Positions 1-60,742 of a stretch of 64,000 nt of DNA are shown one piece after another; the first letter of the stretch is position 1, and every line of letters starts with the position of its first letter. Location of the stretch: the NCBI GenBank assembly GCA_002269645.1, contig NIVC01000835.1, forward strand, positions 1 through 64,000, written 5' to 3'. The notes under the pieces are model-generated. The model did not search any database, was not told where the DNA came from, and worked only from the letters and a program-made list of their open reading frames with translations. The translations under genes were made by a program, and so were the position numbers. Origin of the DNA: Macrostomum lignano. Its lineage: Eukaryota.

Positions 1-901
1 AATTACCAGCAGAACAATTATCGATCTAAAGGCATCAGTTCGGGAAAATACTTCTAGGTAGTAGTACAAGGTGAGAACTTTGTGAAAACACCCCTAATCT
101 ACCTTTAAACAGAGTAGAATTTTTCCTCTGTCTTGCCTTTTCAGGAAAATATAAATCGTTCTATTTTAGGAAACGAAATGCCGGATCCTACATGTATATT
201 GTCTATAGAATTATAATTGCAAAGTTTTACATATACATGTGATCGACAAAGTTGATATAAACTATTTCAGTACCTATGAATTTAAATGGACATATAAACG
301 ACACGTATTTACGCAAGAAATCTACAGAAACTCAATCGTTCGTTATGCCCTATGTAATTAGCAGAAAAAAACATTTGCGCTTAAGTTAATCTTTGAGTGA
401 ATCTGAAAGGCAATGTTATATGTCTCATAAACAAACTAGCGACCTTATCAGCTACTTTTTAAACAGATAGCAGTGGCCAAAAGTAAAATACAATGGGTAG
501 CGTAAGTAACTTTCTGTGGCAAATACACGTGTAAACTGGTAAACCCGTTAGTTTGTAACAATGAGTAAAACAAATCCTACTTGCTTATTTATATCAGAAA
601 AACCTAAAAAGAAATTTAGAAGAGAATTTCAAAATAAGGGTTAAGTATTTCTTTTTGTTGCTTAATAAACACATTCTATTCTTTAGTCACGATTTCCTCT
701 TTAGATTTTAATTTTCACCGCTGATGTAGTCATTAAAAGTTTTGTTCTCCACTTGAGCTTTAATTTTTGGTTGTTTTGTGCCTGCATATTGCAAAACTAG
801 TGCATAGTCAATTGTTGCTTCGCAGGCTAGTTTGTTTTTTATCTTTCGGTTACGTTCAGTCATACGAAAGACCACACCAATGTCGATTCCTTCTGACCTG
901 C

Positions 902-1079
902 CCTCAGCCCAGGCTATGTAATTTAAAAAAATGGCCAACATATGCAGGCTATGGCTTTAATCTGCATGCTGAAAAGGGAAACCTGGTCAGTATATTGGCA
1001 AAGTTGATCCAAATTTCCAGCTGAGACAGGAGGGCTGGTCAAAAATTCTTCCTTATTGAAGTGAATGGTGTCAATGTTG
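902..1079 (+). CDS. NHERF/EBP50-like PDZ scaffold, PDZ exon (frameshifted; 5' boundary approximate)
   Basis: PRLCNLKKWPTYAGYGFNLHAEKG, then after apparent 1-nt indels KPGQYIGKVDPN.PAETGGL...LIEVNGVNV, which is a NHERF-type PDZ. Donor G|GTAAGT at 1079/1080. About 3 indels are needed to keep frame. Confidence 0.8.
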
Positions 1080-1431
1080 GTAAGTGTTGTACTTTTAACA
1101 TTTTACATTTACATTCTACATTTAAGTGAAAACAAGTAACATTATTCAAACTGAAATCAAGTTGAAAGTAAATTATATATATTTGACTTATTATAATAAT
1201 GCTTTTAATTTAAATACATTTTTAGAATAATTAAAGAATTATTGTATTCAATAGGTGATTTGATAGTCACAAAGCATGTTAAATATATATTTAGTGCATA
1301 CAACTGTATATTATTTAAGTTTCTATGAGTACAATGATTTATGAATAGACTGAAATAAATAAATTATTTGCTTTTTACCATTTTAAGTACTACTACAAAT
1401 TACTAATTCATATTTTAACTATCAATTTTAG

Positions 1432-1623: not shown

Positions 1624-1728
1624 GTTTGTATTTTCTTAATTTTGCTCTCTCAACCTTCGTAAGATTACTATTTGAGAAACCAATAAATTTCGAAACTCAG
1701 AAGATTTGAGACCACAAGGAAACTCCTT

Positions 1729-4588
1729 GGGATCAATGGAGTTGGGACCAGAAAACTCGGGATCAGGAAGAGCTGGGACCAGGAAACTCGGGATCAGGGA
1801 CAGTTGGGACAGGAAACTCGGGATCAGGAAGAGCAGGGACCAGAAAACTCGGGATCAGAGAGCTGGGACCAGGAAACTCGGGATCAGGAAGAGTTGGGAC
1901 CAGGAAACTCGGGATCAGGGAGAGTGGGGACCAGAAAACTCGGGATCAGGGAGAGCTGGGACCAGAAAACTCGGATCAGGGAGAGCTGGGACCAGAAAAC
2001 TCGGGATCAGGGAGAGTGGGGACCAGAAAACTCGGGATCAGGAGAGCTGGGACCAGAAAACTCGGGATCAGGGAGAGTGGGGACCAGAAAACTCGGATCA
2101 GGGAGAGTGGGGACAGGAAACTCGGGATCAGGGAGAGTGGGGACCAGGAAACTCGGGATCAGGGAGAGCTGGGACCAGAAAACTCGGGATCAGGGAGAGT
2201 GGGGACAGGAAACTCGGGATCAGGGAGAGTGGGGACCAGAAAACTCGGGATCAGGGAGAGTGGGGACCAGAAAACTCGGGATCAGGGAGAGTGGGGACCA
2301 GAAAACTCGGGATCAGGGAGAGTGGGGACCAGGAAACTCGGGATCAGGGAGAGCTGGGACCAGGAAACTCGGGATCAGGGAGAGTGGGGACCAGAAAACT
2401 CGGGATCAGGGACAGTGGGGACCAGAAAACTCGGGATCAGGGAGAGTGGGGACCAGAAAACTCGGGATCAGGGAGAGTGGGGACCAGGAAACTCGGGATC
2501 AGGGAGAGTGGGGACCAGGAAACTCGGGATCAGGGAGAGTGGGGACCAGAAAACTCGGGATCAGGGAGAGTGGGGACCAGGAAACTCGGGATCAGGGAGA
2601 GTGGGGACCAGAAAACTCGGGATCAGGGAGAGCTGGGACCAGAAAACTCGGGATCAGGGAGAGTGGGGACCAGGAAACTCGGGATCAGGGAGAGCTGGGA
2701 CCAGAAAACTCGGGATCAGGGAGATGGGGACCAGGAAACTCGGGATCAGGGAGAGTGGGGACCAGAAAACTCGGGATCAGGAGAGTGGGGACCAGAAAAC
2801 TCGGGATCAGGGAGAGTGGGACCAGGAAACTCGGGATCAGGAGAGTGGGGACCAGAAAACTCGGGATCAGGGAGAGCTGGGACCAGAAAACTCGGGATCA
2901 GGGAGAGTGGGACCAGGAAACTCGGGATCAGGGAGAGTGGGGACCAGAAAACTCGGGATCAGGGAGAGCTGGGACCAGAAAACTCGGGATCAGGGAGAGT
3001 GGGACCAGGAAACTCGGGATCAGGGAGAGTGGGACCAGAAAACTCGGGATCAGGGAGAGCTGGGACCAGAAAACTCGGGATCAGGGAGAGTGGGGACCAG
3101 GAAACTCGGGATCAGGGAGAGCTGGGACCAGAAAACTCGGGATCAGGGAGAGTGGGGACCAGGAAACTCGGGATCAGGGACAGTGGGGACCAGAAAACTC
3201 GGGATCAGGGAGAGTGGGGACCAGAAAACTCGGGATCAGGGAGAGTGGGGACCAGGAAACTCGGGATCAGGGAGAGTGGGGACCAGGAAACTCGGGATCA
3301 GGGAGAGCTGGGACCAGAAAACTCGGGATCAGGGAGAGTGGGACCAGGAAACTCGGGATCAGGGAGAGTGGGGACCAGAAAACTCGGGATCAGGGAGAGC
3401 TGGGACCAGAAAACTCGGGATCAGGGAGAGTGGGGACCAGGAAACTCGGGATCAGGGAGAGCTGGGACCAGAAAACTCGGGATCAGGGAGAGTGGGACCA
3501 GGAAACTCGGGATCAGGGAGAGTGGGGACCAGGAAAACTCGGGATCAGGGAGAGTGGGGACCAGAAAACTCGGGATCAGGAGAGTGGGGACCAGAAAACT
3601 CGGGATCAGGGAGAGTGGGGACCAGGAAACTCGGGATCAGGGAGAGTGGGGACCAGAAAACTCGGGATCAGGGAGAGCTGGGACCAGAAAACTCGGGATC
3701 AGGGAGAGTGGGGACCAGGAAACTCGGGATCAGGGAGAGTGGGACCAGAAAACTCGGGATCAGGGAGAGCTGGGACCAGAAAACTCGGGATCAGGAGAGT
3801 GGGGACCAGGAAACTCGGATCAGGAGAGTGGGGACCAGAAAACTCGGGATCAGGGAGAGCTGGGACCAGAAAACTCGGGATCAGGAGAGTGGGGACCAGA
3901 AAACTTGGGATCAGGGAGAGCTGGGACCAGAAAACTCGGGATCAGGAGAGTGGGGACCAGGAAACTCGGGATCAGGGAGAGTGGGGACCAGAAAACTCGG
4001 GATCAGGGAGAGCTGGGACCAGAAAACTCGGGATCAGGGAGAGTGGGGACCAGGAAACTCGGGATCAGGGAGAGCTGGGACCAGAAAACTCGGGATCAGG
4101 GAGAGTGGGGACCAGGAAACTCGGGATCAGGGACAGTGGGGACCAGAAAACTCGGGATCAGGGAGAGTGGGGACCAGAAAACTCGGGATCAGGGAGAGTG
4201 GGGACCAGGAAACTCGGGATCAGGGAGAGTGGGGACCAGAAAACTCGGGATCAGGGAGAGCTGGGACCAGAAAACTCGGGATCAGGGAGAGCTGGGACCA
4301 GAAAACTCGGGATCAGGGAGAGTGGGGACCAGAAAACTCGGGATCAGGGAGAGTGGGGACCAGGAAACTCGGGATCAGGGAGAGCTGGACCAGAAAACTC
4401 GGGATCAGGGAGAGTGGGGACCAGAAAACTCGGGATCAGGGAGAGCTGGGACCAGAAAACTCGGGATCAGGGAGAGCTGGGACCAGAAAACTCGGGATCA
4501 GGGAGAGCTGGGACCAGAAAACTCGGGATCAGGGAGAGTGGGACCAGGAAACTCGGGATCAGGGACAGTTGGGAGCAGGAAACTCGGT
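1729..4588. repeat. 31-bp minisatellite, ~90 copies (intronic)
   Basis: Unit GGGGACCAGAAAACTCGGGATCAGGGAGAGT; stop-free, which explains the three ~900-aa ORFs. Confidence 0.97.
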
Positions 4589-4625
4589 TAAACCTTGAGC
4601 TCCACCCCTACTGCTGCACCAACAG

Positions 4626-9110: not shown

Positions 9111-9162
9111 ATAGCATCAGCCTCATCTGCTCACGCCCATGACCTCCACCTCCCTTATTCAG

Positions 9163-9507
9163 CAGCTGAGTGCCGTTTCATCGCAAACTGCATCTCCGGC
9201 TCCGAGTCCGCAGCAGCAGCGCCGCTCGTCCCCGACCCCGCCAGCGCCAGTCGCCGCCGAAGCCCCGTCGCCGACCCCGCCGGCGCCAGTCGCCGAAGCC
9301 CCGTCGCCGACCCCGCCGGCGCCAGTCGCCAAAGCCGCGGCCCCGGCAGCCGCAGCCCAGAACGGCGGCGGCGGCAAAGGCAGCGACCCAGTCGGCAACA
9401 TCAGCCTGGAGGAGATGCGGGCCAAGATAGGCCAGAACAAGCGCACCCAGGTCAAGATGAAGCCGGGAACTTTCTCTGAGAAGAGCAACATGTTCCAATC
9501 GCTTTGA
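9163..9507 (+). CDS. NHERF-like gene, terminal exon with ERM-binding-type C-terminus
   Basis: Polypyrimidine tract plus CAG acceptor (9162 or 9165), phase 0; ends ISLEEMRAKIGQNKRTQVKMKPGTFSEKSNMFQSL*, resembling the EBP50 C-terminal ERM-binding helix. Confidence 0.8.
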   Translation, partial: QLSAVSSQTASPAPSPQQQRRSSPTPPAPVAAEAPSPTPPAPVAEAPSPTPPAPVAKAAAPAAAAQNGGGGKGSDPVGNISLEEMRAKIGQNKRTQVKMKPGTFSEKSNMFQSL

Positions 9508-10315
9508 GCATATCAAAAACACTAACAGACGTATTGTTTTTCCATTTTGTTATACAGGCCAACTAACGATCTCGTTCCAGACTGTAGCGGCAAACCTGCA
9601 AAGTACTTGATGAAAATCATCACTTTTTATCTACTAAAAAGAATAATTGCGCTTTTTCGGCATTAAACTTATTCCAATAACTTTTTTGGCTTAGTGCTTT
9701 TATATCTTATGATGAATATTTCCGTTTTTAGATTCTTGTGTGTATGAACGTGCCGTGCCGTGTGTTCTGTCGTTTCAAATTTGTACTGCACATTTCAGCA
9801 CAGTTTTTGTCATTCCACGTGTCGCCCTCCCACCCCCCGTTATCCGTTGTTTTATCATCAGCTCACTACAGATATCGCTGCTCTTCCACTAGTTAAGACA
9901 GCTGGACTCAATTTTACTGATGCTATCAGGGTACGTACGTGTTGCACGGCGATTATGTTGTGTTAGATTCTCTGCTTTCGAAAAGTACAACTCATTATTG
10001 TAAGCTGATTTCTACAATCGATATATTTAGAAATCCAAATAGCTTTACGATTATCAGATTAGAATGTGCTATAGATCTGTCTTATACACAAATTCATGTT
10101 TATACGGTTCACGATTATTATATACTATTGTGCCCAATACTCACAGCTGATGTCTGTCTGCTCAAAGTTTTTTGTGTTTTTTATCAATTGAAATAATAAA
10201 TTCATAAATATACACTTGGCTCGTGTCTCTTGTGCCATTTTGTTGCTGGGAAATCGATTGTATCTTTTGCGTGGCTCATGTTCTGATTTTTTATCTTGTC
10301 GGATTTGGGTTGCCA

Positions 10316-11312
10316 CCCTTCCAGATCCTCAGTTGCTGGGCCAGCCTTCCAGATCCTCAGTTGCTGGGCCAGCCTCACAGATCTTCAGTTGCTGGGCCAG
10401 CCTCCCAGATCCTCAGTTGCTGGGCCAGCCTCTCAGATCCTCAGTTGCTGGGCCAGCCTCCCAGGTCTTCAGTTGCTGGGCCAGCCTCTCAGATCCTCAG
10501 TTGCTGGGCCAGCCTCCCAGATCTTCAGTTGCTGGGCCAGCCTCCCAGGTCTTCAGTTGCTGGGCCAGCCTCTCAGATCCTCAGTTGCTGGGCCAGCCTC
10601 CCAGGTCTTCAGTTGCTGGGCCAGCCTCTCAGATCCTCAGTTGCTGGGCCAGCCTCCCAGATCTTCAGTTGCTGGGCCAGCCTCCCAGGTCTTCAGTTGC
10701 TGGGCCAGCCTCTCAGATCCTCAGTTGCTGGGCCAGCCTCCCAGGTCTTCAGTTGCTGGGCCAGCCTCTCAGATCCTCAGTTGCTGGGCCAGCCTCCCAG
10801 ATCTTCAGTTGCTGGGCCAGCCTCTCAGATCCTCAGTTGCTGGGCCAGCCTCCCAGATCCTCAGTCCGCCAGTTTCCCAGATCCTCAGTTGCTGGGCCAG
10901 CTTTCCAGATCCTCAGTTGCTGGGTCAGCCTTCCAGATCCTCAGTTGCTGGGCCAGCCTTCCAGATCCTCAGTTGCTGGGCCAGCCTCCCAGATCCTCAG
11001 TTGCTGGGCCAGCCTCTCAGATCCTCAGTTGCTGGGCCAGCCTCCCAGGTCTTCAGTTGCTGGGCCAGCCTCGCAGATCCTCAGTTGCTGGGCCAGCCTC
11101 ACAGATCTTCAGTTGCTGGGCCACCCTCCCAGATCCTCAGTCCGCCAGCTTCCCAGATCCTCAGTTGCTGGGCCAGCCTTCCAGATCCTCAGTTGCTGGG
11201 CCAGCCTTCTAGATCCTCAGTTGCTGGGCCAGCCTCCCAGATCCTCAGCTGCTGGCCAGCCTCCAAGATCCTCTGTTGCTGAGCCAGCCTCTCAGATCCT
11301 CAGTTGCTGAGC
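10316..11312. repeat. 28-bp minisatellite, ~35 copies
   Basis: Unit CCAGATCCTCAGTTGCTGGGCCAGCCTY. Confidence 0.96.
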
Positions 11313-11916
11313 AAGCCCCCCCTCCGATCCTCAAGTTATCTTGTCTAATTAATCAATGAAAGCAGGAATTTACCACAATTATAGCTAGTCGTCAAGCTTC
11401 AAATATTCATAGTTTAATGAAAAATTACATGGCACTTTTATTCTGCTGTTAAGTCATGAGTAAGTCATCGCCATGAAGTGTTACGAGCGTAAAATGTTGA
11501 CAGGCTGATGCGAATTGGACTAATACGCTCAGACACCCACATGAGCAAAGTGCAAAATAGAAAACGCATGCAATAAAGCAAAGTGGGGGACGGGTATTTT
11601 ATATGCAAACATTCAACACAACATAAATTTTCAGATAAGCAAGATTGAAAACTGTGGTTAGTAGTATAGTCGGACATTTTATCTATTATGGAATCGTGCA
11701 TGACATACGCGACTGACTGATTTGAGTGGATAACTGGCGTTACATGTACGAGCTATTTGTGAGAAATTCATTTCTTCTATGATCATTCGTCTGCATGCAG
11801 CTGCCCGTAACAAGTACGTGTAAGGTCATCCATTATCGATCGCTGCCTAAAAAGAGCAGATGGGCACAGGGTACGAGCGTAAATAGTCCTGAGATACTTT
11901 TAGCTACTTCAACTGT

Positions 11917-12350
11917 ACCCACCCACCTCACTCCTTACACCCACCTCACTCCTTACACCCACCTCACTCCTTACACCCACCTCACTCCTTACACCCACCT
12001 CACTCCTTACACTCACCTCACTCCTTACACCCACCTAGTTGCAATTACAGGGACCTCACTCCTCACACCCACCTCACTCCTCACACCCACCTCACTCCTT
12101 ACACCCACCTCACTCCTTACACTCACCTCACTCCTTACACCCACCTAGTTGCAATTACAGGCACCTCACTCCTCACACCCACCTCACTCCTCACACCCAC
12201 CTCACTCCTCACACCCACCTCACTCCTCACACCCACCTCACTCCTCACACCCACCTCACTCCTCACACCCACTTAACTCCCTACACCCACCTAACTGCAA
12301 TTAAAGGCACCTCACTCCTCACATCCACCTTACTCCTTACAACCACCTCA
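11917..12350. repeat. 18-bp minisatellite (left arm of inverted pair)
   Basis: Unit TTACACCCACCTCACTCC. Confidence 0.93.
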
Positions 12351-12398: not shown

Positions 12399-12913
12399 TC
12401 AGGCGTCTGAATCTTCCAGCTTTCGTATCATACGGCTGAATCCGTCCTGCTCCAGCAGTTCCTCATTGTTGAGAAGCTCCTGAAAGCTGTCCGACAGTTC
12501 GCCCTCCGACTCCTCCAGCTGGAGAGCGTCACCTTCCTCCACGCCGTTCTCCTCATCGTCGTCCCAGATTCCCTCAGCGCCGGCCTGGATCTCCCGCACC
12601 AGCTCCGGATCCAGCAGCGGCGACTCGGGCCCGCCCGCCTCGTCCTCCGCCTCCTGCAGCGCCTGAAAGTCCAGCTGGACGACCGGAACCGGCGCCTGGG
12701 TCGCTTTGATGTCGGTCTCGTCGATAACTGGTGACGACTCCGCGCCCCCGTGGTTGTCCTCGGCGGCGGCCTGTGCCTCGCTATTTACCAGGTCTACAGT
12801 TGCGGATTCGACGTCCCTGAGAATTGAGCTTAATGAGCGCTGGGGAATTCTGGACGCTTTCTGTTGCGGCTTCGGATGCTGTACGATAGACGCTGCCAGC
12901 TCCGGCTCTTGGA
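12399..12913 (-). CDS. TM-PDZ-acidic repeat protein, terminal exon 5
   Basis: Acceptor TTCTCTCCACAG, phase 1, acidic ORF to TGA; the joined CDS of 5 exons is 3411 nt (1136 aa) with no stop. Confidence 0.85.
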
Positions 12914-13016
12914 CTGTGGAGAGAACCAATTAGTTTTTTAATTTTTATAGTCAGTTCTGTGTACCTATCTCTGATACTGAGCGATGTAGTTGATCAGTTT
13001 GTTGTTGTGGGTTGAA

Positions 13017-13499
13017 GTGGGTGGGTGTAAGGAGTGAAGTGGTTGTAAGGCTTGAGGTGGGTGTAACTGCAGTTAGGTGGGTGTAAGGAGTGAGGTGGGT
13101 GTAAGGAATGAGGTGGGTGTAAGGAGTGAGGTGGGTGCAAGGAGTGAGGTGGATGTAAGAAGTGAGGTGGGTGCAAGGAGTGAGGTGGATGTAAGAAGTG
13201 AGGTGGGTGCAAGGAGTGAGGTGGTTGTAAGAAGTGAGGTGGGTGTAAGGAATGAGGTGGGTGTAAGGAGTGAGGTGCGTGTAAAGAGTGAGGTGGTGTA
13301 AGGAGTGAGCCGGGTGCAAGGAGTGAGGTGGGTGTAAGGAATGAGGTGGGTGTAAGGAATGAAGTGGGTGTAAGGAGTGAGGTGGGTGTAAAGAATGAGG
13401 TGGGTGTAAGGAATGAGGTGGGTGTAAGGAGTGAGGTGCGTGTAAGGAGTGAGGTGGGTGTAAGGAGTGATCCGGGTGCAAGGAGTGAGGTGGGTGTAG
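13017..13499. repeat. 18-bp minisatellite (right arm, reverse complement of 11917-12350)
   Basis: Unit GGAGTGAGGTGGGTGTAA. Confidence 0.93.
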
Positions 13500-13678
13500 A
13501 AGTTAGTTGGCTAGGGGTTGATGTGCTTGTAAAAGCAGATTGAGTAGAGAGTATTAAATTGGAGGTTTCATGTCAAATTTAGAACTTTCCTTTTGTCAGT
13601 TATTATTGTTAATGAACACATGGTAAATAGGTGAATTTGTGTTTTATCGCTTTATAACTTTACAATTATGCAACTTAC

Positions 13679-16042
13679 CTGTATCAACCGGCAGATTGTT
13701 TAAGTTTTCCCACCGGCCTCCAGTCACCGGGCGATTCTCCAGATTCTCCCACCGGCCTCCGGTCACCGGGTGATTCTCCAAACTTTGCCATTCTGCCGCT
13801 TTCTCCCGCGCAGAGTTCGGCGTCTTCCTCGATGCCGCCGCAGCCTCCCCGTCTTCGGCATCTTTCTCAACTGCTCTGGCCGCCTGGCGTATCGCCTTTC
13901 GCAGCCGGCGGTCGCTGCCGGCCTCTCCGTCCGAGTTGTCGTCGATGCTTTCGTTGCTGCTGCAGCTGCCGCTGGACTCGGCCCGGCCTACCCAGCGAGC
14001 CGGCGCTGACGCGTCCAGGCTGCGGACGTCCGGCGTGTCATCATCGATAGAGACCTCCTCGATGTCGTCGTCTCGTTGAAGCTCGTCAATATCTTCTTTA
14101 ATTTCCGGAGCTTCGATTCGAACTTCCGGTTTGGACGCCTTCCGTTCTAGATTGATTGACTGCGCCGACTGCGCCACCGAGCTGACTGCGGCCTCTATGA
14201 TCTCCTCTGCGTCCGAATCCAGCTCCGCCTGTGCATCCAGGTCGACTTCCGCCTCTGCCTGTACATCCAGGTCGACTTCCGCCTCGGCCTGTACATCCAG
14301 GTCGACTTCCGCCTCTGCCTGTACATCCAGGTCGACTTCCGCCTCGGCCTGTACATCCAGGTCGACTTCCGCCTCGGCCTGTACATCCAGGTCGACTTCC
14401 GCCTCGGCCTGTACATCCAGGTCGACTTCCGCCTCGGCCTGTACATCCAGGTCGACTTCCGCCTCGGCCTGTACATCCAGGTCGACTTCAGCGCCCGATT
14501 TGATCCCAATGTCAGATCCGATTTCTTCTTCCGATTCCCTTTCAACTTCTGCATCAGCGTCGATTTCTACTTCCACTTCTGGACCGACATCAACACCGAA
14601 TTCTACTTCCGCTTCCGGTCGGACATCAACACCGAATTCTACTTCCGCTTCCGGTCTGACATCAACACCAAATTCTACTTCCGCTTCCGGTCTGACATCA
14701 ACACCAAATTCTACTTCCGCTTCCGGTTGGACATCAACACCGAATTCTACTTCCGCTCCCGGTCGGACATCAACGCCGAATTCTACTTCCGTTTCCACCT
14801 CTGGTCGGCCATCAACATCGAATTCTACTTCCGCCTCCACCTCTGGTCGGCCATCAACATCGAATTCTACTTCCGCCTCCACCTCTGGTCGGCCATCAAC
14901 ATTGAATTCTACTTCCGCCTCCACCTCTGGTCGGCCATCAACATCGAATTCTACTTCCGCCTCCTGTCGAACGTCAACATCAAGTTCCAATTCTGCATCA
15001 ACTTCCGGTCGGATATCAACACCGAATTCTACTTCCGCTTCAAATTCTGTTCGTAAGTTAGCGTCCAGCTCCACTTCCGCATCAACTTCCGGTCGGACGT
15101 CAACATCGAATTTTACTTCCGCCTCCACCTCTGGTTGGCTCTCAAAATCGAGTTCTAGTTCCACATCAGCTTCCGGTCTGAGGCCCACTTCAACTTCCCC
15201 ATTGAATTCCACTTCGGCATGAGTTGCAAAGTCAACCGCAGCTTCGAATTTTTCTTCAACATCAATCTCCACTTCCGGTTCGACTTCCGCGGATTCCGCA
15301 TTCGACAACGCTTTGTCGGCATTCCTAACAGCCTGAACCACTAGGTCGGCCTCGTCCAGATCGTCATCCCCGGACGCTGACAGGCTGTCGTCGCTGCGCG
15401 GCCGCGGCATCTCCACCAGGGTGTTCGCCGTGCCTGACGAGGTGCCGCCTGACGAGGCGGAGCCGCGCCTGCCTGCGGACTCGGTCAGCGCGTCTTCAAC
15501 GGCGCCACCCAACGAGCGCCAGGTTTTGCCTTCGTCTCCGGGTTCCAGCGACAAGTCGAGGTTCGGGACCGCCACCTCGCCAATGACAGCGTAGGCGTGC
15601 GAGTCGGCCTCCTCTTTCAGCATCAGATCCACCGACAGTGCCACCCATTCATCCTCCTGTGGCTCCGCCTCCGCCCAGTCGGAGTTCAGCAGGGCCCGCT
15701 CGAGTTGGCCACCAGCTGCCGCCTGCGGGACTCCGCCGCCGCGGGCCAGCAGAAGCCGCGGCCCTCCTGTAGGCGCAGGCGCCGGCGCCTCCTCGGAGAC
15801 AACGATCGATGGTAGGGCGACGCTTCGCGAGGCCTCGCGCAACGGTGTTGACGGCGGCAGCGGCGGGGCGGCGGCGGCGGCGGCGGCGGCGGCGGCTGAA
15901 GTCGCTGGCTGCCGGTGCTGGAATTCTACTGTGAGGCCGTAGCAACCGGCCAGGCCGAGCAGGAAGCTCACGTGCTCGGGGTCGACCGCGTCGGCCGCTT
16001 CGCCAGCTGTTAGGTCGACCCGGATCGCCACGATGCGGTCGC
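13679..16042 (-). CDS. TM-PDZ-acidic repeat protein, exon 4 (PDZ C-half + acidic repeats)
   Basis: Acceptor CCTTAG, donor ACAG|GTAAGT, 2364 nt phase 1-1; (G)DRIVAIRVDL...VSFLLGLAGCYGLTVEFQHR, then PEVEAEVEFDVDGR / PEAEVEFGVDVR / AEVDLDVQAE repeats and WENLENRPVTGGR-like x3. Confidence 0.88.
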
Positions 16043-16103
16043 CTAAGGCAGTGGAGAGGCCGGCATTCGTTAGCAAGGGAATTTTTAGGATTTAGGTTAT
16101 GGT

Positions 16104-16261
16104 TAGGGTTGGGGTTGGGGTTGGGTTTGGGGTTGGGTTGGGGTTGGGGTTGGGGTTGGGGTTGGGGTTGGGGTTGGGGTTGGGTTTGGGGTTGGGTTGG
16201 GGTTGGGGTTGGGGTTGGGGTTGGGGTTGGGGTTGGGGTTGGGGTTGGGGTTGGGGTTGGG
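16104..16261. repeat. (GGGGTT)n telomere-like hexamer tract filling most of a 244-bp intron
   Basis: ~25 TTGGGG units preceded by GGTTAGGGTT. Confidence 0.93.
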
Positions 16262-16286
16262 ATTGACATCAGGACAACGAGATTAC

Positions 16287-16446
16287 CTGCTCGAACGCCT
16301 TGCCGACTGCAGAGCGAGCTGTGCGCGGGGTCCTTGGACACCAGCACCATGTTGTTGCTCAGCTTAATCTTTAATTCCAAGTCCTCCAGCTTGGTGGCGC
16401 GAACTGATATCAGATCCTTGACCTCCGACTTTGGCTTGTTGACATG
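16287..16446 (-). CDS. TM-PDZ-acidic repeat protein, exon 3 (PDZ N-half)
   Basis: Acceptor CTTCAG, donor CAG|GTAATC, phase 1; ELKIKLSNNMVLVSKDPAHSSLCSRQGVRAG. Confidence 0.75.
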
Positions 16447-16558
16447 CTGAAGTTGTTGATGAAGACAACGGTTTGATAGTGAACAGGTGAACTCTGGGAA
16501 CCAGGTTAACACACCGGGAATCAGGTGACACACTGGGGTGAAACACAGGTTGGCTCAC

Positions 16559-16725
16559 AGGATATTCTGTGGGCTGGCTCACCACTTTGGCAGAATCCTG
16601 CTCGTTGACCATCCGCACTGAGGCGCCGCCGCCCTGCTCAGCTCGGCGACCGGTGGTTGCGGGCCGGTTCTCCACCCAATCAAAGCCGGTGTTCTCGACG
16701 CCGGACCGGGACCTGTGTGAGCTCG
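16559..16725 (-). CDS. TM-PDZ-acidic repeat protein, exon 2
   Basis: Acceptor GGACAG (phase 1), donor CCT|GTGAGC (phase 0); SSHRSRSGVENTGFDWVENRPATTGRR...TEYP. Confidence 0.65.
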
Positions 16726-16784
16726 CTGTCCAGGGAGCGTGCGACGGCAAAGGGACTAGGTTAACGTGAACTGTATCCTTGTCC

Positions 16785-17129
16785 CTCTACCCTCTCATGC
16801 TCTTCTCCCTCTCCCTCTCATGCTCTCCCTCTCCCCCTCATGCTCTCCATCTCCCCCTCATGCTCTCCCTCTCCCCCTCATGCTCTTCATCTCCCCCTCA
16901 TGCTCTTCATCTCCCCCTCATGCTCTCCATCTCCACCTCATGCTCTCCATCTCCCCCTCATGCTCTCCATCTCCCCCTCATGCTCTCCATCTCCCCCTCA
17001 TGCTCTCCATCTCCCCCTCATGCTCTCCATCTCCACCTCATGCTCTCCATCTCCACCTCATGCTCTCCATCTCCACCTCATGCTCTCCATCTCCCCCTCA
17101 TGCTCTCCATCTCCCCCTCATGCTCTCCA
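16785..17129. repeat. 20-bp minisatellite (left part, interrupted by transposon)
   Basis: Unit TGCTCTCCATCTCCCCCTCA. Confidence 0.95.
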
Positions 17130-20100
17130 CACGGTTAGGCTGGGCACTGATATTGGGGAAAAAATTGCCACAAGATGGCACCTATGTACCATTAAACTAC
17201 TGCCTTTCTGTAGTTCAGAAAGCCCACTCATTAAAATTCATGTGCCTATCTTTGTGTACAATCTGTGTACAATTGCTCTCATTAATTGCTCTCGTTAATA
17301 AGACAAGCAGAAATTTTTAGCAAGTGACAGACTTAATGTATACTTGTACAAAAAAGATTACAAGATTACAAGAAGTTTATTTAGGTTAATGTTTGTGTAG
17401 TATTATTGCTTGTTTTACTTGTTAACTAGCTTGTAAGTTAGTAAGTTAAATAATTTTACGATTTCTAACATTACAAATTGTTTACATTTAAATACTCAGA
17501 AACAGCATGGGTTTTATAGAAAAATTTCGAAATAACTATATTCTTTTTGTGTAGCAAGTTCCTCAAATATTAACCAGAACTACATGCATTTCTGCAATAA
17601 TATTGCAAGGTACGCTCGTATTAGCATATAAAGTAGCAAAAGTATGAAAGCTTTCTACAGTACGGGAGCTTGCAAAAATTTTAGTATTTTAAATTTATAG
17701 GGTCCTTTGAATACTACTTTACTGTAAGACTAACAACCACTGCCATTTCTTTTACCAGTAAAGCAGAAAACCGAGTTACCGGGATTAAATGTGGTGGCTG
17801 TTGTAAGCAACCACGGCGCGCAAAAGATTTTGGCCAAACTCAGCATGGTGCGCTGGCAGGCTGTACCGTGACCACGTTTTGGCAAAATCAGAGTGAACAC
17901 TCTCCACTGCTTGCTCGCTGCAGCTGCCAAGCGCTTGCCCTGTCCGCCGGCAGAACTCTCCAACATGGCAAAAGACAACGTGAACTTTTGGGGTGACAGG
18001 TAAGCTTAAGCTCATGTAGGCCAGTCGAAAATTCTCAATTGCCTCTTCAAAGTCTGCCGCCAATTCGGTTCCAAAGGCGCTGCTGACCAGCCGATCGAAC
18101 GCCATCAGACACGCCCCGTACGGCTGTAATGGTGGAGGCAGATCAGCGTGAAGCTGCGGTGATTTGCGGAGCAGCTGGCGGCAGGCGTTTCCTTCCATCA
18201 TGCCACCTCTGTAATCAGCTCGAATAATGCCATGCTGATGAGCCCACTCGAACGCGCGATTCGCACCCCAAGCTTCGTTGAGCTTGTCCAGCAGTCGGTT
18301 GCTGACTCCAAGGAGCAGGTGCAGCTCAGGTGGCGGCAGAAGCATCAAAACTTCTTTGTCATCATCGCCTGGTAGCAGTGGCATGTTGACACAGTTTTTA
18401 AAGTTCTTTGCCTTTGCACGAACTTGGCCAGCTGCTTGAAACTGCTGAGCAAACTGCCGAATTCTCCCAAGAGTTCTTGGCACACCATTTTCTGTAAAAG
18501 GAGCCAGAGCTTCGCAATAGGGGCACGGATGTGTACAGGAATGAGGTTGCAGTCCGCAGATGATGTTTGCAACTTTCATATCTGCAGTGACTGGGATTTG
18601 AAGTTCGTTGACAGCGATCGCCTCTAGCAGAGCCTGAATATTTCCGTAAGTCTCAGGAACGTCGTTGACGATCGCAAGCAACAGGATCTTCTTGACACCC
18701 GTGTCACAGAATTTCCTGCTGTTGGCTCCTCGAGTTCCGATTTCGGGTTTTGCGTTAGAGCCAATTATCGAAACGCAAACTTTAAAAAATCCGCCGCCAC
18801 CATCGAGACCCAGCAGACAGTGAAAATCATTGAAACTGCGTTGCTGAGCAACATGTGCAATGAGTTTGACCGAGTCGTTGCAGACAACAGTCGGGCGGCA
18901 AATAGTGTCGGCTGTTGCGGCAGTCGAGGTCAGCTCCGAGAACTGGAGATTCTGGATGTCGAAGTAATCCTCTAATGCTCGATTTTGCTGTACCAAAATT
19001 TTCTTCAAGTTTGACTCGACTGCACGAGATGAGCTCGCGCCAGCACGAAGCACTTGAGCAGCCTGTAGCACTTGATTGTTGCTCAGATTCAGAGTTGTTT
19101 TCAAGTGCATCATAGTGTCCGTCCTCGTTGGAGGAAAGCTCGCACTGCTGTTTTGAGCAACATGCACAGCAACTCGAATCGGATGGCCGCCTCGATGTCT
19201 GGCCAGAGTGATCGAATTCGAATCCGCCGTCGACCCACCCGTCTTTTCGGCAATGCAGTTGCTGGCCAGCATCTCCCTTGTCCTTGGGCTGACTGTTTGC
19301 TCGATGTTAGTCACCTTAGCTGTCGAGTTGCATTTGTGCTGTTTGCCACGCCCAACTGGAGAATGACAGTATGAGCAGGAAAGCACAGCCGTTGCTCCTT
19401 CAGCTGGTGCTGGGGATCTTTCGCGTGGTCGACCAGGTGGGGCTCGAGCAGGACCTGTTGTGTAAGGCGTCTTTGGATCGCTGCCTTTGTGGTGATTGCC
19501 ACGAGCCATTTCGCACAGTTGGCAGTTGCAATCCGGTCTGCTTCTGGTGGCTGGAGGCAGACTCTTCATGTCGGCTATTATCTTCTCGTAATCTGGTCGC
19601 GGTGGCAGAGCACGAGGCGTCAGACTTCTTAGTGACGATAAAACGCGCCTGCAGCCCTGGCAAACTCCTTCAGGTAGAAAGTGCCGCACTGCCTCGTAGT
19701 CCTGGAACAAGTCGGCTGCCACGGATTCGAAATTAGAGCAAGAAGAAATCAGCGCAGAAGCTCGTCTCAAGCAGAGCAGGCACAAACTTTGCCTGTTCTC
19801 GTTATGAGTTTTTTTTGTCGTTGGCATTGTAGACAGTACAAGCTATGCAAACAGCTCTTTCAGTTCAGGCACTCGCTTGTTTTAGATCAAATAGAACTAG
19901 ATCAAACCTTTATAAGTAAATTGAGCAGTATGATAACCAAGTTAACGCACCTGGCAGAAATATTACAAAGCAATTATAGATAAGATACTACTGTGTTATT
20001 ACTATTGATAAATTCCTCTTTATGACTGCAATTATAAGGCATAAGCTACCTGTGGTGCAGCGTTTTATTGCTCAAGCAGATATGGGGCAATATTTACTCC

Positions 20101-20335
20101 CAAAGTCCTTTGTGGTCTATTCATAATTATCATCTGATTAGCAAAAATTCTATTAGAGCAATAAAATATTTTGTTTTAAAGTGTACCGAAACATATAGTG
20201 CCATACACAGCAAAGATAGGCACATGAATTTTAATGAGTGGGCTTTCCAAACTACAGAAAGGCAGTAGTTTAATGGCACATAGGTGCCGTCTTGTGGCAA
20301 TTTTTTCCTCAATATCAGTGCCCAGCCTAACCGTG
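17130..20335 (-). mobile_element. Full-length Chapaev-type (CMC superfamily) DNA transposon, 3206 bp
   Basis: 125-bp TIRs (17130-17254 / 20211-20335, 5 mismatches), CACGG...CCGTG termini, 4-bp TSD TCCA (17126-29 / 20336-39), single transposase ORF. Confidence 0.88.
17785..19827 (-). CDS. Chapaev transposase, 680 aa, uninterrupted
   Basis: N-terminal H-x7-CLLC...P-x3-CxxC...CxCxxC (Chapa/RAG1-like zinc finger); DDE candidates LDGGGG, TADMK, SEQAVESVH; CxHPCPYC, ELHLLLG, TPKVH motifs. Confidence 0.9.
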   Translation of the reverse strand: MPTTKKTHNENRQSLCLLCLRRASALISSCSNFESVAADLFQDYEAVRHFLPEGVCQGCRRVLSSLRSLTPRALPPRPDYEKIIADMKSLPPATRSRPDCNCQLCEMARGNHHKGSDPKTPYTTGPARAPPGRPRERSPAPAEGATAVLSCSYCHSPVGRGKQHKCNSTAKVTNIEQTVSPRTREMLASNCIAEKTGGSTADSNSITLARHRGGHPIRVAVHVAQNSSASFPPTRTDTMMHLKTTLNLSNNQVLQAAQVLRAGASSSRAVESNLKKILVQQNRALEDYFDIQNLQFSELTSTAATADTICRPTVVCNDSVKLIAHVAQQRSFNDFHCLLGLDGGGGFFKVCVSIIGSNAKPEIGTRGANSRKFCDTGVKKILLLAIVNDVPETYGNIQALLEAIAVNELQIPVTADMKVANIICGLQPHSCTHPCPYCEALAPFTENGVPRTLGRIRQFAQQFQAAGQVRAKAKNFKNCVNMPLLPGDDDKEVLMLLPPPELHLLLGVSNRLLDKLNEAWGANRAFEWAHQHGIIRADYRGGMMEGNACRQLLRKSPQLHADLPPPLQPYGACLMAFDRLVSSAFGTELAADFEEAIENFRLAYMSLSLPVTPKVHVVFCHVGEFCRRTGQALGSCSEQAVESVHSDFAKTWSRYSLPAHHAEFGQNLLRAVVAYNSHHI

Positions 20336-20440
20336 TCCATCTCCTCCCCCTCATGCTCTCCATCTCCCCCTCATGCTCTCCATCTCCCCCTCATGCTCTC
20401 CATCTCCTCCCCCTCATGCTCTCCATCTCCCCTTCACACT
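20336..20440. repeat. 20-bp minisatellite (right part, continues after transposon)
   Basis: Same unit resumes immediately after the right TIR. Confidence 0.9.
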
Positions 20441-20507
20441 CCATCTCAGCCTCCTGCTCTCCGCTAATGCCACCCCCCCCCCCGAAGCCCTTGCAGCCAG
20501 CTCTCAC

Positions 20508-20712
20508 ATCTCCTCTTCATCAGGCGCATTCGCCGCAGCAGGTAGCAGACGAGGATGACGCAGACGCATACGCAGACGATAAACGTCACGGCGAAGGTCA
20601 CCCCGGCTGCCACTCCTGGCGAGACGTCCTGTGCTCGAGCCTCATAGGGAAGGATTGCGATTATCAGAGCTGTGGTGGCCAAGGCCCTGGCCACCTTGCA
20701 CACCAGTTGCAT
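20508..20712 (-). CDS. TM-PDZ-acidic repeat protein, exon 1 (signal peptide + TM)
   Basis: ATG at 20712; MQLVCKVARALATTALIIAILPYEARA|QDVSPG, TM VAAGVTFAVTFIVCVCVCVILVCYLL, then RRMRLMKRR; donor T|GTGAGA, phase 1. Confidence 0.7.
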
Positions 20713-21238
20713 TGCGTCACGCAAGCTGCTGCTGCTGCTGCAGATCCGGGGACTGACCGACTGAACTTATTAAATGAATTAGTGCTCAGGTGAGCTCAAC
20801 GAGCTGGTCGGGTTTATTCTGACCCTCGCAATTAGAGGGCCCGTGTAAAAGAGATTGTTGCCAGAATATAAGACAAAACTTCAGGGGTAAGTGTATAGGC
20901 ATTTCTATTGTATGGTTAACACCGCCTGGCCCAACTCAGTCTCTCAAACTATTGCCATCTTCTCTTTCCCTGACCCACTGAGGTTTCCTTCTTTCAAAAA
21001 TCTAAGGGAGGGTTTGGTTAGCAGCGCGCACTTCTCTCGCTCGATGCCGCGCTCCGCCTGCTCCATTTCAGCGGCCGCAAATGACACTTCACTCTGACCC
21101 GCCCACCCCTTCCCCAAAGGAGCGGTTTATTGTTTGAGAGGACAGGCCTTTGTGCTAGCCAGCTGTGCCATTCATGCCGCCTTTCGGCATTCCGCTGTGT
21201 TGGCTTTGGTTACTTCTCGCCCTCCACCTGTCCGTGTA

Positions 21239-22985
<1,747 letters not shown>

Positions 22986-25404: not shown

Positions 25405-26529
25405 CCAGATCAGATACAAGGCAGAGTAGTTCGCCGGACACTTCTCACCGAGACCAGTGACGACACAATTCAAGAGTATCTGACAGTTCGGGACAGAGTC
25501 GAGCGGTATGTCAAACCGGAGCATGGAATCCGAATACAGATCCAGTCGATTGAGAGGATCCAAAACTCCGAGTTGGATCGCAAACTGAGAAACTGTCTCA
25601 ATGAACTGCACGCCAGCGACCGCCAGCCGCAGCTGCTTTTTCACGGGACGACGAAACAAAACGCCGAGAAAATTATCGAAGATGGATTCAAGGTCGGTAG
25701 TGGAGGCATGTTCGGTCCGGGAATCTACTTCGCCACCGATAGCACCAAGAGTGCTCAATACTGTCGCGACAATGGAGCCAAGTACCTGCTGTTATGCGAT
25801 GTTGCTATCGGAAAACCGTTGGTTTGCAAAGCAGCCGATCCCAGGCTCAGCATTGTACGGCTGCAAGCTGAGGGCTGCGACTCTGCGTTTGCTAAACGGA
25901 AGACTAAGAGCAGCGGAGGTGTACTCAACGATGAGTACATTGTGTACCGAGCTGAGCAGGCAGCCCCTCGGTACCTGGTGAAGTTTATTTCTGGCGAGAT
26001 GAGTGCGATGGTTCACAAAGAAGTGCAGTGCGATTTGCGGATCAAGTTAAATATGGCTCACAAAAAAGTGCAGTGCAATTTAGAGATCAATTTCAAGACC
26101 TTAGCGGAGCACACACAAGCACTCGCAAAATCGAAAATAGAAAGTTGGTCCTCAAAGCTATTCGGTAAGAAACTTAGTAAAAGTGCTTTTATACTCATTT
26201 CTATCGCCGCGTTTTGCTGTTTGATTTATCCACTTCTATTGACCGTCTACTGCTGTCTGTTAATGCTATCAAAAGTGGGCATCGTCATTCTGAGCGCGTT
26301 GTTTTCATGCCTATGCTTCGCTGCTGTCTGCTGTACCGTGATTTGCACCATTGCCATCTGGATTGCTGCGGTTGACTATGGTGGCTCAAGCCAATTTCAG
26401 AACACCGCTTCATGTGCCTCGGTTTCGGAGTATACAATCAAAGTTTTGTTCGTTATTCTTGTTTTCATTTTCAGATCTTTTTGCCGCCACTTAAAAGAGA
26501 AAATTGTTGTCAATTTTTTCCATGGATGA
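25405..26529 (+). CDS. PARP-family ADP-ribosyltransferase (tankyrase-like H-Y-E catalytic domain) with C-terminal TM helices; 5' exon not identified
   Basis: Frame is open from acceptor TTTTAG at 25404; LFHGT, GGMFGPGIYFATDSTKSAQY, LLLCDVAIGK, NDEYIVYRAEQAAPRYLVKF; hydrophobic Cys-rich C-terminus. Confidence 0.85.
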   Translation, partial: PDQIQGRVVRRTLLTETSDDTIQEYLTVRDRVERYVKPEHGIRIQIQSIERIQNSELDRKLRNCLNELHASDRQPQLLFHGTTKQNAEKIIEDGFKVGSGGMFGPGIYFATDSTKSAQYCRDNGAKYLLLCDVAIGKPLVCKAADPRLSIVRLQAEGCDSAFAKRKTKSSGGVLNDEYIVYRAEQAAPRYLVKFISGEMSAMVHKEVQCDLRIKLNMAHKKVQCNLEINFKTLAEHTQALAKSKIESWSSKLFGKKLSKSAFILISIAAFCCLIYPLLLTVYCCLLMLSKVGIVILSALFSCLCFAAVCCTVICTIAIWIAAVDYGGSSQFQNTASCASVSEYTIKVLFVILVFIFRSFCRHLKEKIVVNFFHG

Positions 26530-38106: not shown

Positions 38107-38134
38107 CTGGAAATGGGAGTGGTTTGCGAAACTG

Positions 38135-38558: not shown

Positions 38559-38654
38559 GCAGGTTATGCATGCTGAAACAAGAGGACAGGGTCTTGTTGC
38601 TGGCCGACACTTAGAGAAGAATTGAATTTATTGAATCGATAAGTGGCGACTCAC

Positions 38655-53109: not shown

Positions 53110-53199
53110 CTGAGCGTTCGTAGGCAGCGAATTGTCAGCAAGTTATAGCGTAAAACATGCTAGTAACTGTAAGTAACAGCTAGAGTCCCCGGGTCATTA

Positions 53200-60735: not shown

Positions 60736-60742
60736 AGCTCAC

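What the first reader, a model, noticed from the sequence alone, without database searches (positions are those of the whole stretch)
12399..20712. Membrane-tethered AHNAK/periaxin-like protein: signal peptide, ~6-aa ectodomain, TM, atypical PDZ and acidic repeat rod
Seen: five exons with canonical splice sites and matching phases give a stop-free 1136-aa protein that the ORF track splits into unrelated pieces. It has SP (EARA|QD), a tiny ectodomain, TM, a basic stop-transfer segment, then NNMVLV..HSSLCSRQGVRAGDRIVAIRVDL..HVSFLL..YGLTVEFQHR, then hundreds of residues of PEVEAEV/VDLDV repeats. Knowledge: AHNAK and periaxin have an atypical PDZ in which GDQI(V/L) is followed by a hydrophobic strand instead of VNG and which ends in ..LHR/LKR, followed by P/E/V/D-rich repeats. 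They are known as soluble, mainly vertebrate scaffolds. Inference: this may be an invertebrate relative, or a convergent protein, anchored by its own TM. The phase-1 intron falls in the Gly of G-D; I recall the same position in AHNAK/PRX, which needs verification.
Basis: partly seen in the sequence, partly recalled or inferred. Interest (0 to 1): 0.72.

Follow-up and report, generated by a model that had tools for sequence, protein, structure and literature searches.

The report
Membrane-anchored acidic repeat protein, flatworm orphan

Summary
Observation confirmed. On the minus strand, five GT..AG exons (20712-20508, 16755-16583, 16446-16287, 16042-13679, 12913-12399) give a stop-free 1138-aa protein. 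With the exon-2 acceptor used in the public model (16725) it is 1128 aa. The window comes from Macrostomum lignano or a very close relative. Two paralogous loci in the Mlig_3_7 assembly carry the same five exons. Their transcript-derived model (PAA46243.1 / PAA48277.1; UniProt name "PDZ domain-containing protein") makes the same exon 1 to exon 5 join.

The N-terminus reads as a signal peptide, about 6 outside residues, a TM helix and a basic stop-transfer stretch. The PDZ call is weak: sub-threshold Pfam PDZ_6, PDB hits at E 0.3-1, and an unreliable AlphaFold model.

The AHNAK/periaxin link is not supported by sequence: hhalign probability 1.8%, family HMM 0.1 bits (shuffle p about 0.06), few invariant residues kept, and acidic K-poor repeats. 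One recalled detail did check out: PRX and AHNAK2 both have a phase-1 intron in the Gly of EGD, as here.

An exhaustive HMMER search with residues 181-470 found relatives only in M. lignano. Best reading: a lineage-restricted, membrane-tethered polyanionic scaffold. Modest interest.

The parts
20508..20712 (-). Exon 1 (205 nt). It holds Met1; a signal-peptide-like segment aa 1-27 (20632-20712; n-region K6/R9, 12-aa hydrophobic core, A-R-A|Q); outside residues QDVSPG aa 28-33 (20614-20631); a TM helix aa 34-59 with 5 Cys (20536-20613); and RRMRLMKRR aa 60-68 (20509-20535). Donor is GTGAGA, phase 1.
   Evidence: It is 100% identical over 205 nt to both paralogous loci, while the other exons are 94-97.7% and the upstream 500 nt 95.8% identical.
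16756..20507 (-). Intron 1 (3752 nt): a 20-bp minisatellite interrupted by a 3.2-kb DNA transposon (17130-20335).
   Evidence: The transposon is absent from intron 1 of L001 and L002, where the intron is about 1.0 kb.
16583..16755 (-). Exon 2 (173 nt; 143 nt if the annotated acceptor at 16725 is used). It encodes a Ser/Arg/Gly-rich juxtamembrane linker and ends in phase 0.
   Evidence: The public model P0001 uses the downstream acceptor. The 10 extra codons carry 2 of 11 amino-acid differences between copies.
16287..16446 (-). Exon 3 (160 nt, phase 0 to phase 1): first half of the PDZ-like module (K145..G180: KLEDLELKIKLSNNMVLVSKDPAHSSLCSRQGVRAG). It ends on the first base of Gly180.
   Evidence: The corresponding PRX exon is about 53 codons and the AHNAK2 exon about 51, and both end at the same Gly (my count).
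16043..16286 (-). Intron 3 (244 nt, phase 1, GTAATC..TTAG), mostly a (GGTTGG)n array. It splits the Gly codon of the G-D motif.
15912..16042 (-). Start of exon 4: second half of the PDZ-like module (G180-R223: GDRIVAIRVDLTAGEAADAVDPEHVSFLLGLAGCYGLTVEFQHR).
13679..16042 (-). Exon 4 (2364 nt). It holds the PDZ second half, poly-Ala/Pro spacer, a unique region (aa about 270-470), the acidic repeat arrays, an acidic Ser-rich region, and WENLENRPVTGGR repeats (13680-13790).
   Evidence: An exhaustive HMMER search with aa 181-470 finds only M. lignano.
14211..15179 (-). Acidic tandem repeats, aa 468-790: 15 units of 12-14 aa (RPEVEAEVEFDVDG / RPEAEVEFGVDV) and about 9 units of 10 aa (QAEAEVDLDV). 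Hydrophobic and acidic residues alternate. Net charge is -107 over aa 471-790.
   Evidence: Copy number differs between paralogs. AF2 predicts 27 beta strands.
12399..12913 (-). Exon 5 (515 nt including the stop at 12399-12401): acidic C-terminal tail ending ...RKLEDSDA.
   Evidence: It is 96.2% identical to L001 and L002.

Best explanation
This is one of at least three near-identical copies of a Macrostomum-restricted gene (public models BOX15_Mlig031930g2/g3). Shown: the five-exon structure, transcript-derived support for the same join in the paralogs, and the sequence features.

Inferred topology: a cleavable signal peptide (A-R-A|Q) leaves about 6 residues outside. A Cys-rich TM helix follows, and the RRMRLMKRR stretch fixes the remaining roughly 1070 residues in the cytoplasm. 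If the first hydrophobic segment is not cleaved, the result is a hairpin with the same cytoplasmic bulk.

Inferred function: about 85 residues from the membrane sits a highly divergent PDZ-like module. It keeps the helix-A/strand-D 'G-x-x-x-GD-x-I-V' core but has no Gly in the carboxylate-binding loop (KLEDLELKI). It is therefore more likely a dimerisation or internal-motif module than a classical C-terminal-peptide binder.

The rest is a polyanion with net charge about -187. Its core is about 24 short amphipathic acidic beta-strand repeats that gain and lose units quickly. The protein most likely acts as a membrane-tethered polyanionic scaffold or spacer, possibly binding cations or basic proteins. 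Any likeness to AHNAK or periaxin lies in overall layout (PDZ first, then a giant repeat exon and an acidic tail), not in demonstrable ancestry.
For: Gene model. Organism and public models. The annotation is transcript-based: PMC5730564. Same exons in the paralogs. N-terminal features. Exon 1 is invariant between copies. PDZ-like signal: the only Pfam family at E<=10 is PDZ_6; 6 of 7 PDB sequence hits are PDZ domains aligned on the GD motif; UniProt name; the secondary-structure order in the low-confidence AF2 model is PDZ-compatible. Repeats. Moderate-confidence all-beta model (pLDDT 66.6, and 80-90 over the 10-aa units) whose nearest folds are beta-solenoids. Restricted distribution: one 50%-identity cluster among 1.84 billion representatives and none in metagenome contigs.
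Against: No profile reaches a curated PDZ threshold: PDZ_6 scores 13 bits against a cut-off of 27. The AF2 model of the domain is unreliable (pLDDT 42.7) and its Foldseek hits are not PDZ. Signal-peptide cleavage and topology were read from sequence only; no predictor or experiment was available. AF2 tends to over-predict beta-solenoids for perfect repeats (my knowledge), and a chain this acidic may simply be disordered. dN/dS between copies is 0.48 (aa 1-470) to 1.1 (C-terminal part) on very few substitutions, so constraint is not demonstrated. Function is entirely inferred. Expression of this particular copy, which has a 3.2-kb transposon in intron 1, was not shown.
Confidence: 0.6

Rival explanations
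1. It is a true but very divergent relative of the AHNAK/periaxin family, so the family would predate vertebrates. Here it has acquired its own signal peptide and TM anchor and an acidified repeat rod.
For: The phase-1 intron falls in the Gly of the G-D motif exactly as in human PRX (c.184|185, Gly62) and in PRX and AHNAK2 genomic ORF fragments. The exon holding the first PDZ half is of similar size (54 versus about 53 and 51 codons) and ends at the same Gly; the phase-0 start I infer for PRX exon 5 would match the window exon. By my reading, the strand D-E turn has the same one-residue-shorter spacing (GDxxxxxRV). Pairwise BLASTP to the PRX and AHNAK2 PDZs gives the same alignment at E 0.004 and 0.054, for single comparisons only. 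The overall order matches: PDZ, giant repeat exon, acidic tail.
Against: hhalign probability is 1.8%. The family HMM scores 0.1 bits with shuffle p about 0.056. PRX and AHNAK2 are absent from the domain's PDB hits while canonical PDZs are present. Family-invariant residues are mostly missing. All named hits of the family profile are vertebrate. The repeats have 2 Lys in 320 residues and no shared unit. The base rate of this intron position among PDZ genes is unknown, and the site here is a CAG|G proto-splice site, so independent gain is plausible.
Confidence: 0.1
2. There is no PDZ fold at all. The 13-residue GxxxGDxIV match is chance, and the protein is a TM-anchored, largely disordered orphan.
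For: No Pfam PDZ model reaches its threshold. The PDZ_6 match covers only 13 residues. PDB hits are at E 0.3-1. The AF2 model has pLDDT 42.7 and its Foldseek hits are unrelated folds. The GLGF loop has no Gly.
Against: The only families that surface in two independent libraries are PDZ. The PDZD3 alignment spans 48 residues from helix A to the last strand. UniProt's automatic annotation calls it a PDZ domain. The predicted strand/helix order fits a PDZ. The intron position matches two PDZ genes.
Confidence: 0.22
3. This copy is decaying or non-functional: a young, fast-evolving repeat-bearing duplicate with little selective constraint.
For: dN/dS is about 0.5-1.1 between copies. My reconstruction of the L002 copy breaks frame inside the repeats. 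This copy carries a transposon in intron 1. The neighbouring NHERF-like PDZ gene in the window needs three frame changes at homopolymer runs.
Against: The full 1138-codon reading frame is intact, with all splice sites. The transposon is intronic. Exon 1 is identical across copies. The paralogs have transcript-derived models. The substitution counts are too small to judge dN/dS.
Confidence: 0.08

Closest known systems
Periaxin (PRX) and AHNAK2 (AHNAK family scaffolds)
   Same: An N-terminal PDZ-type module is followed by a very long repeat region in one giant exon and an acidic C-terminal part. A phase-1 intron splits the Gly of the G-D motif. The first-half PDZ exon is of similar size. The strand D-E turn lacks the canonical Asn-Gly, as in GDQLLSARV (my reading).
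   Different: No significant sequence or profile similarity. PRX and AHNAK2 PDZs match Pfam PF00595 and hit ZO-1 and DLG4 at 1e-7, and this domain does not. PRX and AHNAK repeats are Lys/Pro-rich and ampholytic or basic (PMC7072810), whereas these are Glu/Asp/Val with almost no Lys. Every named hit of the family profile is vertebrate.
Canonical PDZ domains (e.g. PDZD3/NHERF4 PDB 2v90, Scribble PDZ; Pfam PF00595/PF17820)
   Same: These are the best, though insignificant, sequence hits. The alignment runs from helix A through GDR(I/L)VA(I/V) to the last strand. PDZ_6 is the only Pfam family reported.
   Different: All scores fall below every curated threshold. The carboxylate-binding loop has no Gly. 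Against PDZD3 there is a 5-residue insertion after strand D.
Membrane-anchored PDZ proteins such as SYNJ2BP/OMP25 (tail-anchored) and PDZD8 (N-terminal ER anchor); from my knowledge, not tested here
   Same: A single hydrophobic anchor holds a cytoplasmic PDZ module at a membrane.
   Different: No sequence relationship was found. Here the anchor is a signal peptide plus a type I TM with a tiny ectodomain, and the bulk is a polyanionic repeat array.
Beta-solenoid / amphipathic beta-repeat proteins (e.g. curli CsgA, bactofilin, Pfam DUF7223)
   Same: Short tandem units alternate hydrophobic and polar residues. The AF2 model is a stack of about 27 strands whose nearest PDB folds are beta-helices. 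There are weak Pfam echoes: DUF7223 at 27.6 bits, bactofilin, TamB.
   Different: All matches are insignificant (TM about 0.25). The DUF7223 score drops to 19.7 bits in the paralog with fewer repeats, so it tracks repeat number and composition. The extreme negative charge argues against a stable fold without counter-ions.

Membership tests
PDZ domain (Pfam PF00595 / PF17820) | Profile match at or above the curated threshold | tested here: not met
   The full protein and aa 1-228 give no PDZ hit. The domain alone gives PDZ_6 at E 0.07, 13.2 bits against a cut-off of 27, over 13 residues. UniProt's automatic name is 'PDZ domain-containing protein', but its basis could not be checked here.
PDZ domain (Pfam PF00595 / PF17820) | Six-strand, two-helix PDZ fold | tested here: inconclusive
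   AF2 on the paralog fragment gives pLDDT 42.7. The element order E-E-(h)-E-H-E is compatible, but Foldseek returns no PDZ.
PDZ domain (Pfam PF00595 / PF17820) | Carboxylate-binding loop R/K-xxx-G-phi-G-phi | tested here: not met
   The corresponding stretch is K145-LEDLELKI, with no Gly and two acidic residues.
PDZ domain (Pfam PF00595 / PF17820) | Helix A / strand D core motif (A..G(l)..GD.I(l/v).(v/i)) | tested here: met
   P166-AHSSLCSRQGVRAGDRIVAI aligns to this motif in PDZD3, Scribble, PRX and PDZ_6.
AHNAK / periaxin family | PDZ sequence matching the family profile | tested here: not met
   hhalign probability 1.8%, E 0.027 for one comparison. hmmsearch --max gives 0.1 bits, and 112 of 2000 shuffles score at least as well.
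AHNAK / periaxin family | Family-invariant residues (G19 G25 G29 S39 A41 D51 Q52 S55 F60 E66 D67 A68 L72 Y78 in 42 sequences) | tested here: not met
   In the BLASTP/hhalign register only A41 and D51 among the 14 invariants are kept, with F60 as Leu (the nearly invariant G50 is also kept). The GGG loop, Q52, S55, the EDA motif and Y78 are absent.
AHNAK / periaxin family | Phase-1 intron inside the Gly codon of the E-G-D motif | tested here: met
   Window: GCA G|gtaatc...ttag|GC GAC. PRX: c.184|c.185, with exon-6 skipping giving p.Gly62Glufs, and Tyr77 checks the numbering. PRX and AHNAK2 ORF fragments end ...QEG / ...REG, then intron. How specific this position is among PDZ genes is unknown. 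The neighbouring NHERF-like PDZ gene has no intron there.
AHNAK / periaxin family | Long Lys/Pro-rich repeats (AHNAK 128-aa units; PRX PEVK-type pentamers) | tested here: not met
   Units are 10-14 aa. Over aa 471-790 the composition is E 76, V 62, D 46, A 36, K 2, P 13, with net charge -107. PRX regions are described in PMC7072810.
AHNAK / periaxin family | Intertwined domain-swapped PDZ dimer | not testable with these tools
   This needs an experimental structure or a reliable multimer model. The feature is described in PMC7072810, citing Han and Kursula 2014.
Type I single-pass membrane protein with cleavable signal peptide | n/h/c signal-peptide regions with small residues at -3/-1, a following TM of about 20+ residues, and a positive cytoplasmic flank | tested here: met
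   K6/R9, then a 12-residue hydrophobic core, then A25-R-A27|Q28. The 19-residue Kyte-Doolittle window peaks at 3.0 over aa 40-58. RRMRLMKRR follows. Actual cleavage and topology cannot be tested with these tools.

The most novel reading that the evidence does not exclude
The shared phase-1 intron in the G-D glycine, the similar first-half exon and the PDZ-then-giant-repeat-exon layout could be relics of common ancestry. This flatworm gene would then be a membrane-tethered invertebrate member of the AHNAK/periaxin lineage, and that scaffold family would predate vertebrates and myelin.
Probability: 0.08. Interest if true: 0.6.

Novelty: new variant of a known kind. Interest (0 to 1): 0.3.

Why it matters
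The gene is already in public databases as an uncharacterised, transcript-derived model, so the model itself is not a discovery. What is unusual is the combination: a type I anchor with almost no ectodomain, a degenerate PDZ-like module, and a roughly 1000-residue cytoplasmic polyanion built from fast-evolving amphipathic acidic beta-strand repeats. No detectable relatives exist outside Macrostomum. M. lignano has RNAi and transgenesis, so the function is testable. If the intron-position match with PRX and AHNAK2 turned out to reflect ancestry, it would move the origin of that scaffold family before vertebrates. Present evidence makes that unlikely.

Tried and rejected
1. Word-indexed homologue searches with aa 1-429 and aa 1-228 returned nothing, even though a 95%-identical public protein exists. 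Those negatives are a blind spot of that index and not evidence of absence.
I did not hand it to any other restricted tool. I searched with the contiguous exon-4 translation and folded a fragment of the public paralog P0001, which the tool accepted.
3. AF2 on the PDZ-like fragment gave pLDDT 42.7, and its Foldseek hits (ribosomal proteins, FliF, PaaK) are meaningless.
4. dN/dS between the window copy and L001 rests on too few substitutions.
5. A metagenome scan found no relatives.
6. I tested whether the module is a diverged duplicate of the neighbouring canonical (NHERF-like) PDZ gene. BLASTP finds no alignment and the intron positions differ, so I rejected this.
7. The Pfam echoes do not hold up. 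Amnionless (18 bits) covers only the TM and tail. The DUF7223 score follows repeat number, 27.6 against 19.7 bits. I treat both as compositional.
8. A literature search for the base rate of PDZ intron positions found nothing usable. No paper mentions Mlig031930.

Full report
**What is in the sequence**

Reading the minus strand of 12399-20712 gives five exons with GT..AG introns and consistent phases.
- Exon 1: 20712-20508, ends in phase 1.
- Exon 2: 16755-16583, ends in phase 0.
- Exon 3: 16446-16287, ends in phase 1.
- Exon 4: 16042-13679, ends in phase 1.
- Exon 5: 12913-12399.

Each exon scores best in the predicted frame with a codon table from neighbouring genes. GC3 is 0.60-0.76, while introns are 46-57% GC and mostly minisatellite. 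A second in-frame acceptor 30 nt inside exon 2 (16725) gives 1128 residues.

**Where it comes from, and independent support for the model**

The word-indexed protein searches found nothing. An exhaustive HMMER scan of 1.84 billion cluster representatives with the contiguous exon-4 translation (aa 181-470) found exactly one cluster.
- It is P0001, 1011 aa, recorded as PAA46243.1 / PAA48277.1, BOX15_Mlig031930g2/g3 of Macrostomum lignano. UniProt names it "PDZ domain-containing protein". A second member is A0A1I8HLA4.
- It has the same N-terminus, linker, module, repeats and tail. It is 95% identical in aligned columns and differs mainly in repeat number and in using the 16725-type acceptor.
- Its two loci (NIVC01004192.1, NIVC01004971.1) contain all five exons at 94-100% nucleotide identity, with the same PARP gene upstream.
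- NIVC01 is the annotated Mlig_3_7 assembly. Its GenBank gene set was derived from an RNA-seq-based transcriptome assembly (PMC5730564).

It is not yet answered for this copy. The window is this species or a very close relative.

Exon 1 is 205/205 identical between copies, while the other exons and the promoter region differ by 2-6%.

**N-terminus**

Residues 1-27 have basic K6/R9, a 12-residue hydrophobic core too short for a TM helix, and A-R-A|Q. Six residues (QDVSPG) follow. Then comes a 26-residue, Cys-rich hydrophobic helix whose hydropathy window peaks at 3.0, then RRMRLMKRR. Whether or not the first segment is cleaved, the positive-inside rule puts the remaining roughly 1070 residues in the cytoplasm. 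This is sequence-based inference; no predictor or experiment was available.

**The PDZ question**

The evidence is consistent but weak.
- Pfam reports no PDZ for the protein or for aa 1-228.
- With the module alone, the single family listed at E<=10 is PDZ_6, at E 0.07 and 13 bits over RQGVRAGDRIVAI.
- Against all PDB sequences, six of seven hits at E<=1 are PDZ domains. They are PDZD3 (2v90) at E 0.33, aligned from helix A to the last strand, and Scribble.
- AlphaFold on the equivalent fragment of the public paralog gave pLDDT 42.7. The order strand-strand-(short helix)-strand-helix-strand fits a PDZ, but Foldseek returned unrelated folds.
- The carboxylate-binding loop position reads KLEDLELKI, with no glycine.

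I put the chance of a genuine, degenerate PDZ fold at roughly two in three. If it is one, it is unlikely to bind C-terminal peptides in the classical way.

**The AHNAK/periaxin question**

I recovered the true PRX (4cmz) and AHNAK2 (4cn0) PDZ sequences from the PDB. I then collected 42 family members with a profile search; every named hit is vertebrate, from sharks to mammals.

Evidence against a relationship:
- hhalign against this family gives probability 1.8%.
- An HMM of the family scores the module at 0.1 bits, matched or beaten by 112 of 2000 shuffles.
- Pairwise BLASTP to PRX and AHNAK2 gives the same short alignment at E 0.004 and 0.054. Those values are for single comparisons and vanish at database scale.
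- Of the 14 invariant family residues, only A41 and D51 are kept, with F60 replaced by Leu; the GD glycine is only nearly invariant in the family.
- The closing "HR" is "HQ" in the paralogs.
- The repeats share only Val/Glu/Asp/Pro-rich di- and tripeptides. They have 2 Lys in 320 residues and a net charge of -107. L-periaxin's repeat regions are basic or PEVK-rich (PMC7072810).

- Human PRX exon 5 ends at c.184 and exon 6 starts at c.185. Skipping exon 6 gives p.Gly62Glufs, and Tyr77 confirms the numbering. Intron 5 is therefore phase 1 inside Gly62 of EGDQLL (PMC12617670).
- ORF fragments called on raw vertebrate contigs independently show PRX reading ...SLQEG and AHNAK2 reading ...LREG before running into species-specific intron sequence. 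The second-half fragments begin ..AGDQLLSARVFF.
- The window's intron 3 splits Gly180 of AGDRIV in the same phase.
- The first-half exon is 54 codons here, against about 53 in PRX and 51 in AHNAK2.

This is a real coincidence of position and phase. Its weight is unknown because I could not establish how common that intron is among PDZ genes. The one local control, the neighbouring NHERF-like PDZ gene, has no intron there. The site here is also a CAG|G proto-splice site. I rate true family membership at about 10%.

**The repeats**

There are 15 units of 12-14 residues (RPEVEAEVEFDVDG, RPEAEVEFGVDV) and about nine of 10 residues (QAEAEVDLDV). Hydrophobic and acidic residues alternate in 67% of neighbouring pairs, against 36% in shuffles. 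Unit number differs between the three copies, and the public model lacks 117 residues that the L001 genome encodes.

AlphaFold predicts 27 regular strands. Mean pLDDT is 66.6, rising to 80-90 over the 10-residue units. The closest PDB folds are beta-solenoids, none significant. AlphaFold is known to favour such models for perfect repeats, so "rod" is a hypothesis and not a result.

**Most likely mechanism**

The protein is probably a lineage-restricted, membrane-tethered polyanionic scaffold or spacer. The tiny ectodomain and Cys-rich TM anchor it. The degenerate PDZ-like module provides self-association or partner binding near the membrane. The acidic beta-repeat array and tail form an extended, strongly charged cytoplasmic arm that could bind cations or basic partners.

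The structure of the gene and protein sequence is shown. Topology, fold and function are inferred.

**Verdict**

The gene model is correct but already public. The AHNAK/periaxin reading is an analogy of layout plus one intriguing intron match, and membership is not shown. Interest is modest.

Noticed in passing
window 17130-20335 (TIRs 17129-17254 / 20211-20336; ORF 17785-19827, minus strand): An intact-looking 3.2-kb DNA transposon sits inside the 20-bp minisatellite of intron 1. It has 126-nt terminal inverted repeats (96% complementary) starting CACGG, a 4-bp target duplication TCCA, and a 680-aa ORF with Cys/His clusters and no Pfam match. It is absent from both paralogous loci, so the insertion is recent. 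The CAC.. ends and 4-bp duplication suggest a CMC/Chapaev-type element (my inference).
   Followed up: partly
window 880-1080 (+) and 9139-9507 (+): The downstream, tail-to-tail neighbour is a NHERF-like canonical PDZ gene ([45 protein letters not shown]). After conceptual frame repair it matches PF00595 at 3.9e-6. In this window its PDZ exon needs three frame changes at homopolymer runs, which points to assembly error or a decaying copy. Its donor lies after VNGVNV, not at the GD-equivalent position.
   Followed up: partly
window 11920-12350 and 13016-13498: The same 18-bp minisatellite (CACCCACCTCACTCCTTA) flanks exon 5 on both sides in opposite orientation, so the last exon sits between inverted arrays. 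The arrangement appears to be shared with locus L001.
   Followed up: no
L001 11851-14172 and L002 12072 onward, versus P0001: The public protein model (1011 aa) omits 117 residues of repeats that the L001 genome encodes in frame; my reconstruction is 1128 aa. In L002 my reconstruction breaks frame inside the repeats at about residue 615. The annotated models probably collapse or splice out part of the array.
   Followed up: partly
window 25573-26529 (+): A PARP-catalytic-like ORF with a hydrophobic C-terminal part. It is the conserved upstream neighbour (PF00644 gene in L001 and L002).
   Followed up: no
window 37191-39118 (-) and 52360-62421 (-): Exons of a GPCR-like seven-transmembrane gene (amine-receptor-like by my reading of the ORFs, not tested) and of an organic-anion-transporter (SLCO)-like gene with a 560-aa first coding exon rich in poly-Ala, poly-Gln and poly-His.
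   Followed up: no
window 34669-35136 (-): A 155-aa ORF with a GIY-YIG-like motif (VYVGET..R..H), as found in Penelope-like retroelement endonuclease domains. It is probably a retroelement remnant.
   Followed up: no
window 21237-22984, 1706-4591, 10312-11321, 62443-63953 and others: Very large micro- and minisatellite arrays fill most introns and intergenic DNA. Examples are (TATC)n of about 438 copies just upstream of the gene's promoter and a 28-bp unit repeated 36 times. This fits the 15% simple/tandem-repeat content reported for M. lignano, and it generates many long spurious ORFs.
   Followed up: no
The word-indexed homologue search did not return the 95%-identical public M. lignano protein that the exhaustive search found. 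Its negatives for this window should not be read as absence.
   Followed up: yes
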